In this document: one piece after another, positions 9,060 to 38,618 of the stretch | How positions within the stretch are numbered: position 1 is the first letter of the stretch | Layout: each line of letters starts with the position of its first letter | DNA from: Octopus sinensis | Taxonomy: Eukaryota | Assembly (NCBI RefSeq): GCF_006345805.1 | Contig: NC_043026.1 | Location: 620,001 to 684,000, forward strand | Length of the DNA stretch: 64,000 nt | Reading direction: 5' to 3' | The notes under the pieces: model-generated | Told to the model about the DNA's origin: nothing | The model's database searches: none | What the model saw: only the letters and a program-made list of their open reading frames with translations | Made by a program: the position numbers and the translations under genes

Positions 9060-9220
9060 CGTAATACCATGTGGATATCGAATTTTTGTTTGAGTAAAAT
9101 AGCGTAGGATAATGTGGAAAAATCTCCCAAAGGCAGCCACCACTTTCATCAACACACATCCAACCGGCGTCATGCTCACAACCTCCATGGTTAGAGGAAA
9201 CATAGAAACGACGTCTGTTA
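9060..9220 (-). CDS. Copy B exon 4 of secreted PAN-like family
   Basis: tttacag|T AAC AGA..TAC G|gtaagt; NRRRFYVSSNHGGCEHDAGWMCVDESGGCLWEIFPHYPTLFYSNKNSISTWYY; 161 bp, phase 2 to 1. Confidence 0.8.
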
Positions 9221-10491
9221 CTGTAAAGGAGTAAAGCAAAAATATGGTGCTGTTGTACTATGTGCTGTTATTGTCGTTGTCAGATTTTGCAATTGAAAAG
9301 TTTGTCTCACGACTACGTAATTGTGAAGTTTCCAAGTTCGAACCGACAACGCCCGTTGATTAGACAAATGATATGTTCTCCTTTACAGTAAACGAAATTT
9401 TGTAAGTGAAAGTTTCGTACAAGTAATCTGTGTAATATTTAGAAGGACAGTCTTCATACATGTGTAGTAGACTTTATTTGTCAGTCAATTTAACACTGCA
9501 GCTTCACCATTGGGGCGGGAGGACTTTGATTGTGACAATTCTGTCGTAAATATTTAGGCTAGTTTTTTGTCTGATAATAACGCCATCCCTTTCGCTTATC
9601 CAGAATTCGAAAAGGGCCACAACGAAATCCAACGATTTTTCTCCCTCTTCAGACTGAAAAATATTTCAAAGTGGGCATCGCAAGTCGAGAATGATCAATT
9701 GTCAAAAACATTCAAATATATACTATGTTTATTTTTAAGAGGGTAGGCTGTGATTTTCAGCGATATTTGGTGACTTATTTCTAGCAGATGAAACTAGTAG
9801 ATAGACAGAGGTTACTAACCACTTTTATAATTCCAGGTCCACAAAGAATTACCCAAAATGTCCCAATGCACTGATCAGGTGACAAACTCATCATGGTCAC
9901 CAGTCAATATAAGTGTGCATATGCCATTCTGTGCTATCATTAACTAATTTTCTTTTAATTAATGTATTGATGAGCAGAAACAGGAGAGGAAAGAAAATCA
10001 TACAAATGTTGTCATACATATTTATAAGTAAATGGATCTCGGTCTCTTTCGAAGATGACTGAGTATTCACTTGCATGATTCCTGTGAAATTACTGCCCAA
10101 CGAATTAGTAGCGTGCAATTGAAACCACGAACTTATAATTCCCAGCTTCACATCCTGACCACTAAGCCAAGTGCCTTCATGGCTAGACACAAGTATGTAT
10201 ATATTTATATGCCTACGGCGCGTGCTTATTTGTTGATAGTAAATTCACAAACGGAATTCGATGAGATACTATAATATAATACAAGGAAGTTAAACCCCAG
10301 TCTTTGCAGGTAAACAATAATTAATATTAATTAATTGATATTATTTCTGCGATTAAACTAATATTTATGGCAATGATAGGAATATAGGGGAAGTGTATGT
10401 AGTTGATTACATAGACACTGTACTTCACAGGTACTTTATTTATAGACCCCAGCAGGATAACAAAAAACAAACAGTGATAAAAATTACTTAC

Positions 10492-10655
10492 TACGCTCCT
10501 CTAATTGAGAAGTAATTGTGAGAGTGGTAAGGTAGGTCGGTCCAAGGAGAACTTATCAACTTTCCAGGAGAGAACCAGCTTCCAGGGTTTGTATTTCGTC
10601 CATCAAACACCATATCAACTACAGCTGTTTGGTTTTTATAAATCACTAGTTTTAC
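10492..10655 (-). CDS. Copy B exon 3 of secreted PAN-like family
   Basis: tttag|GTAAAA..GCGTA|gtaagt; VKLVIYKNQTAVVDMVFDGRNTNPGSWFSPGKLISSPWTDLPYHSHNYFSIRGA; 164 bp, phase 0 to 2. Confidence 0.8.
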
Positions 10656-10672
10656 CTAAAGTAAAGCTTGAC

Positions 10673-10752
<80 letters not shown>

Positions 10753-34420: not shown

Positions 34421-34945
34421 CAGCGTGTCCCAGTATTAATTATCTATTTCAGTGAAATCGGACAGTTTCATCAGAAACTCGCATTTATTTATGTTTGGCT
34501 TGTTTAATATCCGTTAAAAATTTATAAGTATTTTATTTTGTCTATAATTTTATAATTGTGTTTTTTATAATTTTATTTTCATTTCTGTTGGATTCTGATT
34601 GTTTGTTCACTACTTTTACTTTCGCTGAAATCATTTTCTCTTCCTCCACCCGGAGAATGGAACAATAGTTTGGCTGAATTTAAAGAATGCATTCAGTTAG
34701 CATTGCAGGGCATAATTCTTACAATGCTTCCAAATGTGATTCGTAATGCCGAGGATATATTTGAAATTTGCAGGGATACAGACGAAGCAAATGTCGAAAA
34801 TTTTCAATAAAATTTTGATGTAAGATTTATAAATTGATTTATTTGGGTATCCTAATTAATTAATGAACGTAAAATTTTGTCAGTTTTTCGTTTTACATTT
34901 GCGCGTTTTCCATAAAAAATAGAAAGTTAATTCTGGGACACCCTG
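34421..34945. mobile_element. Tc1/mariner-type non-autonomous element
   Basis: TA|CAGCGTGTCCCAGTATTAA ... TTAATTCTGGGACACCCTG imperfect TIRs. Confidence 0.7.
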
Positions 34946-37900
34946 TTTATGATACTCCTGCTTATGTGTGTGTCTATATATTCATATATTCTTTAACTCT
35001 CTCTTTACACAATTTATTTTACTTTATTAATCAATTATTTATTGAACTGCTCAACAGGCAAAGACATTTGAAAACAATATTCATAATCCACGTAACTATG
35101 TAAGTTTTTTTTAAATTTCTTCTAGAACAATCCGTTGATAATGAAATTCATCATTTCAGTCGGTCTGTATATAAATGTAAACACCTCACCCACCCACGCA
35201 ATTTGGAACCAGTTTGGTAAGTTTGATAAGTGTCAATGCACGAAACACTGAGTCACGTTGTAACTTTTGGCGATTAAATAAAAAAATAAATATTTATATA
35301 CACACTTGTTTTCAGTTCAATTTTCTTGTTCATGCGTGGATGAAGGATGAGTGACCGGAGAGGAGACGGAGTGACGTCACGAAGGGACCGAAAGGAGGGG
35401 AAAAGAACGTTAGAAGCAGCCGGTTTTAAAAGGGCCGCTTTCTTACGGTATCGACGGCGAAGTCAAGTGATGTGCTGGGAGCGGTCGCAGAATAGTTGAA
35501 CTCCATTGACGAGTGGTGTTGAAAGGTTTGTTAGCAGGTCGTATAGACAAGCAGGGAAAGAAAGTGAAAAATAGGTAAGCTTCTGACATTGCGGAAGTTT
35601 TACAAAAACTTTTATCTTTCCGACACAAAGTGCATCGTCAGAAGGAAACAGAAATGTCCAGTTACACACCCTACTCAAACTGTGAGGATGAGACTTTGCG
35701 CATGAAATAGAGGTTTTTGTAAAACTTGCCGCATTGTTAGAAGCTGTCCTATTTTACCCCCCCCCCCGCCTTTATTGGTTCTACAATGCTTCAAGCGAAA
35801 TACAAAACACCTATGGCTGTGTTCCTCATTGTGTGCCTTTTCATAGTGTACCTTGTATACGCATATAACATGTTATCCCTAAACAGTTCTTTGCAACTAC
35901 GAAGACAGAGTGTTCACGGGAGGTGGGATGAGAATATGATGGTTGATTATTGTTGCTGTACAAAAAGGGATTCCCAATGCTAAAACATCGAAGGACGTTA
36001 GTGAAACAAAGATTGCTTCTTTCAAAATGACGTGAGACGTTTTTTTTAAGGATATCATGTTATATGCATATAATTTGCAATATTTTGTTGTGTTACAAAT
36101 TCTGTATCAATAGAAGCGGATGAACCTGAGCCTCCATTTATATACTCTCTATCGTATGCAAAAATTATTCCTTTCTCTGGTCGAAATCCTACTACGATGA
36201 AACAAATTGAGCTATATTCATAATTTTACTATATTTAGCCAAGGGAAAGATAATAATGAAATATTTCTTACACTTTGGCCTTCTGCTCCAAGAACAAGGA
36301 CATAAAATGAAGAAAAACTACATTTTTGTGAGAATGTATATCAAAGTGAAAACGAATCGCATATCTGGTCTCAGTTGGAGGAAGGGCTTCAGAAACCATT
36401 GTCTATTAAGAGGAAAAACATTTAAGTCTCTTAATTCTGTAGACCTATCAAATTAGATGTTTACAAATTGTATCGTATTGTGACTTTGTTTTTCCTCCAG
36501 TATTTCCATGACCATCGCTCTGATGACATTTTCTGTCTTGTAAGTTGTGTCATAACCTTCAAACATGTCGCCCGCTTCTCTTTCTAGACACATCGTTTCC
36601 CTGTTAATCTTTCTGTCAGTCATAAGTCCTTTTATTCTCCAACTGCTACTCTTTCGAACTCACTGCAATCGTCTTCTTTTCCTTTGGTCAATGATATTCA
36701 GTTCTTTCAGTTTTCTGTCAATCAATATGTTTTGAATATATGGGCCCCTTCCTTCTCTGCAGTCCCTTGTACTACACTGACCCCGACCCTTGTTTGCGAC
36801 AAAATTAAAAAAATTATCCTGTAGTCCGTGTCTTATACGTTGATGCATTTAAAGAAACAAGTTGGATTCGAACTTGAAACTTTTACTTACACATATATAC
36901 TTAATGCTACATATTCAATAAATGTAACCATGTATTGAATTTATGACAGCATCGATCCTCCTGTTTGTTGAGATTTTATCGAATCTTATCGATTAAACAC
37001 TGAAACATATTCTGCGCCCAAACATGAATTTCTGAATCCAAAAGCCAGACCTGTTGACAATAATCAATGTAAGAATTAATTCAAACTAACAACCTCATGT
37101 GATGACTGTCACTCGATATAGGCAGGAAATTCTTAGCTGTAATATTGTAAGCTTGAACTAAATTAATAAACTGAACTGAATATTCACTCTAACATTTTCA
37201 ATTCTCTATATTGCCTTCATAGATCTTTCGCGTGCCAACATACTATTACATACAGTGCAGTATTACAAATCGTTCAGCAGAGATACTAGCTTTTAAACGT
37301 CGATAAAAACCATAATCTTGGCTTTTTAATGTTGTCGTTTTCATTACACGCAAGGTTTGTGTGTCCGTGTGCAGCGAAAAGTAACCAGCTTCAGTATAGA
37401 AATAAATCTATATCATATACATATTTCATTTTAATATTTCTATTATATGTAATTTTCTAGATGGTGTAATTTAATTGTTCATTTTGAATTGATAAAAGGT
37501 GGTTTTTTTCTAATATAATATAATATATTATATTGTGTGAAATTTGATTTGGTATTTCTAAATTGATTTTTTTTCCTTGTAAGTTTGGATTTTATTCCCT
37601 CAAATAATAATTATCATATACATATATACATACGTAGACACCATAGGCGTGCGGCCCATGGAAGCAAAGGAAGCAATGCTTCCCTTAAAGATCATAGAAC
37701 AAAAATTGAAACTCTATTACTTATTTTTCATTAGATAGTTCTTATGTTCTGTAAAATTAATATAAACTTCATGAAATCATAGGCTTCAGAGTCTTATTGT
37801 CGGAATTAGCATGAGACGACAAGCAGTGGCAGAACGAGACAAAAAAAGCTGTGCAAGGGAAGCAACACGAGCAACACGACCCCTGTTGTACTCTTTGGCT

Positions 37901-38290
37901 CCAACTTTCTCTCACTCTTCCTTCCTGCTTCTTGTCCCTGACTTCCTACGCAACCGCTGAGCCTGGATGCGCATTCATCCATCCGTCGATGCTCTCGGTG
38001 TCGGGGGTTGACCTGCTTTCTCTTCTACGGACCAGGTTTTGGACTTCTCCCATCTTGCGAGCTCTGGGACGAAGACCGTTCGCTCAACAGCAACAGCAAC
38101 AACAACAACAATTATGATATCAACAACAACAACGACAATAATATTGATTTCAAATTTTGGCACGAGTCAAAGTTCACGAGGAGTGGAAAAGTCGATTACA
38201 CCGACCTAGAGTGTTCAACTAATTGTTTGATCCTACTGAAGAAAATAAAACCAAAATCTTCAACAGTAATAATAAAGAAGCTTCACTTAC

Positions 38291-38618
38291 TTTTAATGAA
38301 GGAAATCTCGTTGTTGTCATTCGTGCTGACGACTGTCATAAAATTATTCGGTGCATAATTCTTACAAACACGGCTGACTTTGTTGTAAGTGAAAAATTGC
38401 GATTGGCTCCTCTGAGCGAGCGCGGTACAGTCGAATAGGTTTCGTGTAGAGAAGAATTCTTGTGCTGGAGATGCCCGAAGGTAAGCATAGGTATAACCAT
38501 GGCCCAAAGATTTGTAGTAGCCATGAAGTTCCTGATCTGCGTTAACAACCAGAATTGTTGTAAGGGTTAGCAGCAACACTGCCATTGCAGCTGGACAATT
38601 TGAAAGAAACTGGGACAT
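38291..38618 (-). CDS. Copy C exon 1: signal peptide + PAN/apple-like domain
   Basis: ATG 38618, open frame, ~57% aa identity to A exon 1 (hand count), donor A|gtaagt at 38290 (phase 1); 5' UTR homologous to A. Confidence 0.8.

What the first reader, a model, noticed from the sequence alone, without database searches (positions are those of the whole stretch)
9060..38618. Possible gene nested antisense inside its own paralog: C exon 1 spliced to B exons 2-4 around A
Seen: C exon 1 (-, phase 1) has no recognisable exons 2-5 between 34.2 and 38.3 kb, and B has exons 2-4 (-) but no exon 1. Joining them gives AAC (N) in frame, with the same structure as A. The 17.9-kb intron would contain all of A in antisense. 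Inference: the pre-mRNA would hold both inverted arms and could fold into multi-kb dsRNA covering coding exons. Known: coleoid cephalopods have extensive ADAR A-to-I recoding that depends on dsRNA. This layout could therefore shuffle domains and drive editing or silencing.
Basis: inference. Interest (0 to 1): 0.8.

Follow-up and report, generated by a model that had tools for sequence, protein, structure and literature searches.

The report
Inverted gene-half duplication in octopus cluster
A recent inverted duplication in an octopus gene cluster left one intact gene lying between an orphan first exon and an orphan set of later exons; these could be read as one gene wrapped around its paralog, but nothing shows they are spliced together.

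Summary
The window is from the Octopus vulgaris complex. Gene A is an intact 5-exon gene on the + strand (26020-34154). It encodes a 293-aa secreted protein with a PAN/apple domain and belongs to an octopod-only family. Near-identical copies of its exons 2-4 (B) lie inverted at 20393-9060 on the - strand. A diverged paralogous exon 1 (C, 38618-38291, -) has no exons 2-5 of its own. The inverted repeat is also present in an independent O. vulgaris assembly, and its arms evolve in concert, so it is not an assembly artefact.

The in-frame C-to-B join follows from the exon phases shared by the whole family. B's intactness follows from 99.7% arm identity. No public gene model or protein joins C to B. 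Sense-strand LINEs interrupt the putative transcript.

The best reading is an inverted segmental duplication of A's 3' half in a tandem gene array. A LINE split across the two ends of the spacer suggests that the block carrying A's exon 1 then flipped. B would then be A's original 3' half, and C a relic first exon. dsRNA formation, editing and silencing remain speculative.

The parts
38291..38618 (-). C exon 1: signal peptide plus PAN/apple-like domain, phase 1, donor GTAAGTGA. It is an orphan first exon.
   Evidence: 55% aa and 76% nt identity to A exon 1. The reading frame and donor are intact in O. vulgaris too, with 12 nt differences of which 9 are nonsynonymous.
38085..38699 (-). Whole extent of C's homology to the family unit: 81 bp upstream of the ATG, exon 1, and 206 bp of intron 1.
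   Evidence: Homology ends at a GTT microsatellite followed by a SINE-like repeat.
34155..38084 (.). Stretch between A's stop codon and the C fragment. It holds no family exons on either strand and is partly a repeated element (about 36255-37617).
26020..26350 (+). A exon 1, lying in the spacer of the inverted repeat.
   Evidence: 99% identical to O. vulgaris protein P0001.
29609..29787 (+). A exon 2, in the right arm.
32269..32432 (+). A exon 3, in the right arm.
   Evidence: Matches exon 3 of full-length relatives.
33706..33866 (+). A exon 4, in the right arm. The true frame reads NRRRFYVSS...STWYY.
   Evidence: The 'MEVVSM...' ORF used in gene model P0015 is this exon read in the wrong frame.
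34105..34154 (+). A exon 5 coding part (GFETADSMAIFIRLKS, then stop). It lies outside the window's right arm.
20215..20393 (-). B exon 2, in the left arm. It has no nucleotide differences from A exon 2.
10492..10655 (-). B exon 3. It has 1 nucleotide difference from A exon 3 (Leu to Ile).
9060..9220 (-). B exon 4. It has 7 nucleotide differences from A exon 4, all nonsynonymous. Arm homology ends about 35 bp past its donor site.
9025..21068 (.). Left arm of the inverted repeat. The homologous parts are 9025-11108 and 18667-21068.
11109..18666 (-). LINE and microsatellite insert specific to the left arm, in B's intron 2. It has two reverse-transcriptase-bearing elements that are sense to any C-B transcript. 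The part 14986-17867 is absent from O. vulgaris.
28943..33901 (.). Right arm of the inverted repeat.
   Evidence: Also present in O. vulgaris.
21069..28942 (.). Spacer of 7.9 kb holding A's upstream region, exon 1 and the first part of intron 1.
27958..28796 (-). 5' half of an old LINE (reverse-transcriptase residues 227-503), abutting the right arm's inner end.
21115..21600 (+). 3' continuation of the same LINE type (reverse-transcriptase residues about 553-655 and beyond), abutting the left arm's inner end in the opposite orientation.
2334..7006 (-). Full-length LINE (ORF1 6323-7006, ORF2 2334-5771) flanked by GATA arrays. In O. vulgaris it separates B exon 4 from a further exon 4 and exon 5.

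Best explanation
The locus is a rearranged piece of a tandem array of octopod-specific genes. These genes encode secreted proteins with a PAN/apple domain (exon 1) and a beta-rich C-terminal domain (exons 2-5).

Shown. The 3' half of gene A, from the last 0.67 kb of intron 1 through exon 4 in the window and on past exon 5 to about 35364 judged from O. vulgaris, exists twice in inverted orientation around a 7.9-kb spacer that carries A's exon 1. The arms are kept alike by arm-to-arm gene conversion. A is the only complete gene. B is a promoterless 3' half. C is a 615-bp relic of a third paralog, consisting of its proximal promoter, exon 1 and the start of intron 1.

Inferred. One old LINE is split into consecutive halves that sit in opposite orientations at the two ends of the spacer. 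The block 21069-27868 that holds A exon 1 was therefore probably inverted after the duplication. Before that, A exon 1 lay about 2.2 kb upstream of B exon 2 on the same strand, in register with the next tandem paralog D. B would then be A's original 3' half, and the right arm the copy that A uses now.

Consequence. The order C exon 1, then antisense A, then B exons 2-4 is a by-product of this history and is probably not a functioning nested gene. Any read-through from C would be antisense to A and would carry both arms, so a hairpin could form. Whether such an RNA exists is unknown.
For: Structure.
- Inverted arms at 95-100% identity.
- The same layout occurs in the independent assembly GCA_951406725.2.
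- B-specific exon-4 substitutions are shared by both genomes.

Concerted evolution.
- The arms are 99.68% identical within the window, against 98.5-98.9% between the two genomes.
- Nine sites group the arms by genome and none group them by position.
- Both exon-2 copies share the same two substitutions in O. vulgaris.
- In O. vulgaris, the extra exon 4 beyond the window is identical to that genome's A exon 4.

Gene content.
- A is an intact 293-aa, 5-exon ORF with canonical splice sites, collinear with full-length relatives.
- C's homology is limited to 38699-38085, and no exons 2-5 follow it.

Split LINE.
- Reverse-transcriptase residues 227-503 lie at 28796 to 27958 on the - strand.
- Residues about 553-655 lie at about 21115 to 21373 on the + strand.
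- The two pieces do not overlap, are consecutive, and leave a gap of about 45 codons against 49 expected.
- A LINE piece without its 3' end cannot be a primary insertion, so a breakpoint is required there.

Tandem context. In O. vulgaris, B's strand continues into an exon 4 and exon 5 copy and then into paralog D in the same orientation.

No gene model. No protein matches C exon 1 above 61% identity, and no coding gene is called over C or over B's exons 2 and 4.
Against: - C exon 1 is intact in two genomes. It keeps a strong donor, a TATA-like box in the same relative position as A's (read), and as many family-invariant residues as bona fide members. It may therefore still be expressed.
- All B splice sites and frames are intact, and a matching exon 5 exists downstream in O. 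vulgaris, so a chimeric mRNA is physically possible.
- O. vulgaris model P0015 starts in the extra exon 4 and splices into D. If that model is transcript-based, it implies some transcription of B's strand.
- The LINE halves are old. The YxDD core is unrecognisable across the proposed junction, so the inversion rests on order, orientation and spacing, not on a continuous alignment.
- The left inversion breakpoint coincides with the arm boundary. That needs either one complex event or a break at the stem-loop junction of the palindrome.
- No transcript data could be examined.
Confidence: 0.6

Rival explanations
1. C exon 1 is the live first exon of a gene whose exons 2-4 are B, with exon 5 lying past the window's left end. 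Its 17.9-kb first intron contains A in antisense. The pre-mRNA holds both arms and folds into long dsRNA, which affects splicing, ADAR editing or silencing of A.
For: - Exons 1, 2, 3, 4 and 5 lie in canonical order on one strand with intact AG/GT sites and an open 292-aa frame when O. vulgaris exon 5 is added.
- C exon 1 is intact in two genomes and is not an outlier at invariant residues.
- Median gene length in the O. vulgaris annotation is 20 kb, so an 18-kb intron is not unusual for the genome (PMC10700109).
- The arm segments are perfect complements. The 280-nt exon-2 region alone gives a duplex energy of -479 kcal/mol.
- A-to-I editing in metazoans mainly targets dsRNA from young repeats, and in some lineages sense-antisense pairs (PMC9989829).
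Against: - No protein or gene model joins C to B.
- The in-frame join is automatic for any pair of paralogs.
- B's intactness is explained by its recent origin and by gene conversion.
- Three LINEs lie in sense orientation inside the putative transcript. In mammals, sense LINEs attenuate elongation and cause premature polyadenylation. This is from my own knowledge, and applying it to octopus is an inference.
- Two exon-4 copies would have to be used mutually exclusively to keep the frame.
- Hairpin formation would bury B's splice sites in dsRNA.
- C exon 1 differs between the two genomes 12 times as much as A exon 1 (12 against 1 differences), with dN/dS about 0.9.
Confidence: 0.13
2. C is a stand-alone gene that needs no B exons. 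The exon-1 donor GTAAGTGA carries an in-frame stop. An unspliced or intronically polyadenylated transcript would therefore encode a complete 111-aa secreted protein made of the PAN domain only. B is silent.
For: - The in-frame TGA inside the donor is conserved in A, C and the O. bimaculoides models, which end in ...RSK or ...RKI followed by a stop.
- Several O. vulgaris models are also short forms, made of exon 1 plus the 15-aa exon 5.
- AATAAA or ATTAAA signals lie 0.7-1 kb downstream of C's donor on the - strand.
Against: - The O. bimaculoides 110-113-aa models may be ab initio ORF calls.
- No transcript evidence was available.
- This exact ORF is not on record anywhere.
- Neutral-like evolution of C between the two genomes.
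Confidence: 0.12
3. The inverted arms are an assembly artefact, such as a fold-back chimeric read or a collapsed haplotype, and B does not exist in the genome.
For: Near-perfect inverted repeats are a known artefact class in long-read assemblies (from my own knowledge). Stretches of 662 and 824 nt are 100% identical between the arms.
Against: - The same arrangement is in the independently sequenced O. vulgaris chromosome, at about 98% identity to the window and with different TE indels.
- The arms differ by a 7.5-kb LINE insert and by arm-specific substitutions shared between the two genomes.
- The arm boundaries are sharp and identical in both assemblies.
Confidence: 0.02

Closest known systems
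Inverted segmental duplications (palindromes) with arm-to-arm gene conversion, such as the primate X and Y ampliconic palindromes (from my own knowledge)
   Same: Two inverted arms of very high identity surround a unique spacer. The arms are more alike within a genome than orthologous arms are between genomes. There is evidence that spacer sequence has been inverted.
   Different: The arms are small (5 kb, or 12 kb including TE inserts) and carry only the 3' exons of one gene, while exon 1 sits in the spacer. The inferred inversion has one breakpoint inside the spacer, so it was not a simple arm-by-arm recombination.
Partial inverted gene copies next to their parent gene, such as IDS and its pseudogene IDSP1, or the F8 int22h repeats (from my own knowledge)
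   Same: A promoterless inverted copy of some exons and introns lies some kilobases from the intact gene. It can recombine with or convert the parent gene and can mediate inversions.
   Different: Here the copy covers exons 2-4 at about 99.7% identity. It may be the original rather than the copy. No disease or polymorphism data exist.
Nested genes lying antisense in an intron of a host gene, as described in Drosophila and human, for example the genes inside NF1 intron 27b (from my own knowledge)
   Same: A complete gene (A) lies on the opposite strand between two exons that could belong to one transcription unit.
   Different: The host gene is hypothetical. Its exons are fragments of paralogs of the nested gene, and the host intron would also contain an inverted copy of the host's own downstream exons.
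ADAR substrates formed by young inverted repeats or sense-antisense transcript pairs (PMC9989829, PMC5625713)
   Same: If both arms were transcribed together they would give kilobase-scale, near-perfect dsRNA. A read-through from C would be antisense to all of A.
   Different: Co-transcription is not shown. No editing or small-RNA data were examined.
Inversions flanked by inverted duplications, explained by staggered breaks or replication template switching, as described for Drosophila inversions (from my own knowledge)
   Same: A duplicated segment in inverted orientation occurs at a rearrangement breakpoint inside a tandem gene array.
   Different: The simple staggered-break product does not reproduce the observed order of segments: arm, inverted block, LINE half, inverted arm. 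A second inversion or a multi-switch event is needed.

Membership tests
Inverted segmental duplication (palindrome) with concerted evolution | Two copies in inverted orientation with high identity around a unique spacer | tested here: met
   The arms are 9025-11108 plus 18667-21068, paired with 33901-31341 plus 31323-28943, at 95-100% identity. The spacer is 7.9 kb.
Inverted segmental duplication (palindrome) with concerted evolution | Real in the genome, that is, seen in independent data | tested here: met
   The same layout is in O. vulgaris OX597841.1, with different TE indels.
Inverted segmental duplication (palindrome) with concerted evolution | Arms more alike within a genome than orthologous arms are between genomes | tested here: met
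   99.68% within the window against 98.5-98.9% between genomes. Nine sites group the arms by genome and none by position. The O. vulgaris arms are less homogenised (98.68%). Near the outer edge, B-specific differences are shared by both genomes.
Nested antisense gene within a host gene's intron | The nested gene lies wholly between two consecutive host exons on the opposite strand | tested here: met
   The A coding region 26020-34154 (+) lies between 38291 and 20393 (-).
Nested antisense gene within a host gene's intron | A host transcript exists in which those two exons are spliced together | not testable with these tools
   No RNA data were available. Indirect checks were negative: no protein or gene model contains C exon 1, and none is called over C or over B's exons 2 and 4 in O. 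vulgaris.
PAN/apple-domain proteins | Sequence match to PAN profiles above the curated threshold | tested here: inconclusive
   A itself and close paralogs are sub-threshold (E 0.03-0.06). The distant family member P0041 passes (29.4 bits against a cut-off of 21.4). The family profile hits micronemal protein 4 and HGF in the PDB (E 1.3e-4 to 0.1).
PAN/apple-domain proteins | PAN fold | tested here: met
   In the AlphaFold model of paralog P0019 (pLDDT 79.6), the N-terminal domain matches the HGF N domain with probability 1.00 and rmsd 3.2 A over 87 columns, and also matches AMA1 and MIC4 apple domains. This was tested on a paralog, not on A.
Fibrinogen-related domain (C-terminal part, exons 2-5) | Fold or sequence match to fibrinogen-like globes | tested here: inconclusive
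   Foldseek hits to fibrinogen, angiopoietin-like, ficolin and FGL1 are weak: E 0.03-0.2, probability 0.2-0.6, TM 0.3-0.4, rmsd 10-12 A. There is no Pfam match.
ADAR hyper-editing substrate | Both arms present in one RNA, or sense and antisense RNAs both present, with clustered A-to-G mismatches | not testable with these tools
   Only the DNA-level complementarity could be shown.

The most novel reading that the evidence does not exclude
Because exon 1 sits in the spacer and both arms carry usable exons 2-4 (with an exon 5 beyond each), the palindrome may work as a two-way switch. Inverting the exon-1 block changes which arm supplies the C-terminal domain; the two exon-4 copies differ at 7 residues. 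Transcription entering from the relic C promoter would yield an antisense, hairpin-forming RNA that down-regulates or edits A. This would be a structural-variant-driven isoform switch coupled to dsRNA regulation in a fast-evolving secreted-protein family.
Probability: 0.07. Interest if true: 0.7.

Novelty: new member of a known kind. Interest (0 to 1): 0.33.

Why it matters
The locus is a well-resolved example of how inverted duplication and inversion inside a tandem gene cluster produce orphan exons that mimic a nested chimeric gene. That is a trap for gene prediction. The current O. vulgaris models here skip exons 2-4, and one of them reads exon 4 in the wrong frame.

If the C-to-B transcript existed, it would be a rare case of a gene wrapped antisense around its own paralog with a built-in kilobase hairpin. 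That would offer a natural test of dsRNA-dependent editing or silencing in a cephalopod.

The locus also documents arm-to-arm gene conversion in a small octopus palindrome. It defines the full five-exon structure of an uncharacterised octopod-only PAN-domain family.

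Tried and rejected
- **Assembly artefact.** Rejected after finding the same layout in an independent assembly.
- **C's own downstream exons.** I searched with tblastn (word size 2, E up to 50) and sensitive blastn against units A and D. None were found.
- **Homologue search with the exon 2 peptide alone.** It returned nothing because of the word index. The exhaustive HMMER search later recovered the full-length family.
- **'Exon 4 is not a conserved exon'.** I first thought this because the annotated 'MEVVSM' frame has a stop in paralog D. 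This was wrong. In the correct frame, exon 4 is conserved and intact in A, B and D.
- **First AlphaFold run.** The run on a 163-aa partial model was unusable (pLDDT 44).
- **C as a recent copy of the C-like paralogs P0017 and P0018, 1.6 Mb away.** Rejected: nucleotide identity is 78%, no closer than A.
- **dN/dS and invariant-residue counts to decide whether C is a pseudogene.** Uninformative, because the whole family evolves at dN/dS of about 0.8-1.0.
- **Exact look-up of C's 111-aa read-through ORF in public contigs.** Not on record.
- **Simple staggered-break inversion and simple arm-by-arm recombination.** I worked through both models. Neither reproduces the observed order of segments.

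Full report
**Source and context.** The window is octopus DNA. Exon 1 of gene A is 99% identical to an Octopus vulgaris protein (P0001). Window positions 13389-43206 are collinear at about 97-99% identity with O. vulgaris chromosome OX597841.1:1,681,181-1,709,063 (locus L001). Positions 9103-1 continue into 1,713,328-1,722,356 (locus L002). The two sequences differ by TE insertions and deletions. A 2.9-kb LINE piece (14986-17867) and a 0.7-kb stretch (27173-27871) holding a 0.53-kb SINE-like element are absent from O. vulgaris. They are therefore independent data from another individual or a sister species. Reported heterozygosity of O. vulgaris is 1.22% (PMC10700109).

- Only two exon-1 copies exist in the window: A at 26020-26350 (+) and C at 38618-38291 (-). 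They share 55% aa and 76% nt identity.
- C exon 1 ends in phase 1 at 38291 with donor GTAAGT.
- B exon 2 begins at 20393 after ...tatttcag.
- Joining C exon 1 to B exon 2 gives AAC, and the frame stays open through B exons 3 (10655-10492) and 4 (9220-9060).
- The implied intron of 17,897 nt contains all of A in antisense.
- No exon 2-5 homology lies on the - strand between 34155 and 38085. C's homology to the family unit is only 615 bp (38699-38085).

**The five-exon structure is right.** The O. vulgaris models (exon 1 plus a 15-aa exon) and the O. sinensis models (exons 1 and 2) at first suggested a shorter gene. An exhaustive HMMER search then found full-length members of 234-296 aa in O. 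bimaculoides, O. sinensis, O. vulgaris and Argonauta. Against these, A resolves into exons 26020-26350, 29609-29787, 32269-32432, 33706-33866 and 34105-34154. All have AG/GT sites, and the product is 293 aa. The O. vulgaris orthologue and the neighbouring paralog D also have all five exons intact. Public models P0001 and P0015 are therefore incomplete. The N-terminus of P0015 ('MEVVSM...') is exon 4 read in the wrong frame.

**The protein family.**
- Exon 1 encodes a signal peptide and a PAN/apple domain. The family profile hits micronemal protein 4 and HGF in the PDB. A distant member passes Pfam's PAN threshold.
- The model of paralog P0019 (pLDDT 79.6) matches the HGF N domain with probability 1.0.
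- Exons 2-5 form a beta-rich domain with only weak resemblance to fibrinogen-like globes.
- All family hits whose source was checked are octopods, and the non-octopod hits were weak (E above 1e-5).

**The inverted repeat.**
- The left arm (9025-11108 and 18667-21068) pairs with the right arm (33901-31341 and 31323-28943) at 95-100% identity.
- The left arm is interrupted in B's intron 2 by 7.5 kb of LINE sequence and microsatellites.
- Exon 2 is identical in the two arms. Exon 3 differs at 1 nucleotide. Exon 4 differs at 7 nucleotides, all nonsynonymous.
- The arrangement is present in O. vulgaris with the same boundaries, so it is not an artefact.
- In a four-way comparison of 1,891 ungapped columns, the window's arms are 99.68% identical, while all between-genome pairs are 98.5-98.9%. 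Nine sites group the arms by genome and none by position. Both O. vulgaris exon-2 copies share the same two amino-acid changes. This pattern indicates arm-to-arm gene conversion.
- Near the outer edge, B-specific exon-4 changes are shared by both genomes. The duplication therefore predates their split, and conversion is weaker at the edge.

**Beyond the window.** In O. vulgaris, about 0.2 kb past the window's left end and on B's strand, lies another copy of window 32977-35364 at 98.7% identity. It carries a second exon 4 and an exon 5. Paralog D follows in the same orientation. Window 1-9025, which separates B exon 4 from that copy, is essentially a full-length LINE in the same orientation, flanked by GATA arrays. 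B's strand therefore carries exons 2, 3, 4, a second exon 4, and 5, in tandem register with D. The true arm homology on A's side runs to about 35364.

**A probable inversion of the exon-1 block.** The spacer's two ends carry consecutive pieces of one LINE type in opposite orientations. Reverse-transcriptase residues 227-503 lie at 28796 to 27958 (-). Residues about 553-655 lie at about 21115 to 21373 (+). The right-hand piece lacks a 3' end, which a primary LINE insertion always has, so a breakpoint must lie there. Joining 27869 to 21069 restores the order and nearly the spacing (about 45 codons against 49), but the YxDD core is not recognisable.

I infer, with moderate confidence, that block 21069-27868 was inverted after the duplication. 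Before that, A exon 1 lay about 2.2 kb upstream of B exon 2 on the same strand. That intron size is normal for the family (1.4 kb in D, 0.7 kb in P0017). On this reading B is A's original 3' half, the right arm is the copy A now uses, and C is the stump of the upstream paralog whose 3' exons were lost. The left breakpoint coincides with the arm boundary. This fits either one complex event or breakage at the stem-loop junction of a palindrome; that step is inference.

In favour:
- The exon order, splice sites and frames are intact.
- C exon 1 is open in both genomes, has a TATA-like box placed as in A (read), and is no outlier at invariant residues.
- An 18-kb intron is unremarkable for octopus.

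Against:
- Frame compatibility is automatic within the family.
- B's integrity is explained by conversion.
- No protein in the collections resembles C exon 1 above 61% identity or joins it to anything.
- No coding gene is called over C or over B's exons 2 and 4 in an annotation built with Iso-Seq and RNA-seq.
- Three sense-oriented LINEs lie in the putative transcript.
- The two exon-4 copies would break the frame if both were included.
- C exon 1 differs between the two genomes at 12 sites (9 nonsynonymous) against 1 for A exon 1.

The dsRNA idea is geometrically sound. The arms are perfect complements over hundreds of bases, and young repeats and sense-antisense pairs are known ADAR substrates (PMC9989829). 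It depends entirely on an RNA that has not been observed. B and A transcripts would be the same sense. Only a single RNA spanning both arms, or a - strand read-through across A, would give dsRNA.

**Verdict.** This is a real and well-resolved inverted segmental duplication with concerted evolution in a tandem cluster of an octopod-specific PAN-domain gene family. The 'gene nested antisense in its own paralog' is a possible but unsupported reading of the rearrangement's leftovers. I put the chimeric-gene reading at about 0.13. The structural account is close to certain for the layout and about even for the detailed history.

Noticed in passing
window 26020-34154; O. vulgaris loci L001 and L002: Public O. 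vulgaris gene models for A (P0001) and for paralog D (P0015) skip the intact exons 2-4. P0015 starts in exon 4 of the upstream unit read in the wrong frame, then splices to a cryptic acceptor inside D's exon 1.
   Followed up: yes
window 26351-26358 and 38290-38283: The exon-1 donor GTAAGTGA carries an in-frame TGA in both A and C. The O. bimaculoides exon-1-only models end just past the same boundary, as expected if their donors also carry it. Retaining intron 1 would therefore give a complete secreted protein of about 111 aa made of the PAN domain only.
   Followed up: partly
window 33769-33782 and 33840-33843 against 9157-9144 and 9086-9083: The 7 differences between the two exon-4 copies fall in two tight clusters (5 within 14 nt, 2 within 4 nt), and all change the amino acid. 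This looks like a short conversion tract from another paralog or diversifying selection.
   Followed up: partly
window 38291-38618 against L001 21970-22297: C exon 1 differs from its O. vulgaris counterpart at 12 of 327 sites, and 6 of the 9 amino-acid changes lie between residues 22 and 40, around the signal-peptide cleavage region. A exon 1 differs at only 1 of 330 sites. The O. vulgaris version is closer to the family consensus.
   Followed up: partly
window 1-9025: A full-length LINE lies on the - strand, with a 1145-aa ORF2 (2334-5771) and an ORF1 with a CCHC knuckle (6323-7006). It is bracketed by GATA microsatellite arrays at about 1.6-1.9 kb and 7.9-8.4 kb.
   Followed up: partly
window 14986-17867 and 27173-27871: A 2.9-kb LINE fragment carrying a 0.6-kb tandem duplication (16663-17239 and 17284-17866), and a 0.7-kb stretch holding a 0.53-kb SINE-like element (27336-27868), are both absent from the O. 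vulgaris assembly. The SINE-like element has a 97% identical copy at 63834-63301. These are recent TE polymorphisms, one of them inside A's intron 1.
   Followed up: partly
window 26627-27300: A 45-bp tandem repeat of about 12-15 copies, mostly 99-100% identical, lies in A's intron 1.
   Followed up: no
window 38830-41100, also 17860-18400 and 30900-32170: Kilobase-scale imperfect trinucleotide arrays give long spurious ORFs of poly-His, poly-Asp or poly-Ile. One of them lies directly upstream of C's promoter region.
   Followed up: no
window 44200-51400; L006 12589-25253: A repeat of about 7 kb with a gag-like CCHC ORF (48571-49803) has copies at 91-97% identity 1.6 Mb away on the same O. vulgaris chromosome. 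There the copies are arranged as an inverted pair in and beside paralog P0017. It is probably a large, recently active TE.
   Followed up: no
window 41248-43404: Another LINE, with a 718-aa reverse-transcriptase ORF on the - strand, lies just beyond the microsatellite array upstream of C.
   Followed up: no
window 22892-23788; L002 13213-14099: A 0.9-kb stretch upstream of A exon 1 is 97.8% identical to the matching place upstream of paralog D. The rest of the two units is only 80-87% identical. This indicates either a young TE shared by both units or a local conversion tract.
   Followed up: no
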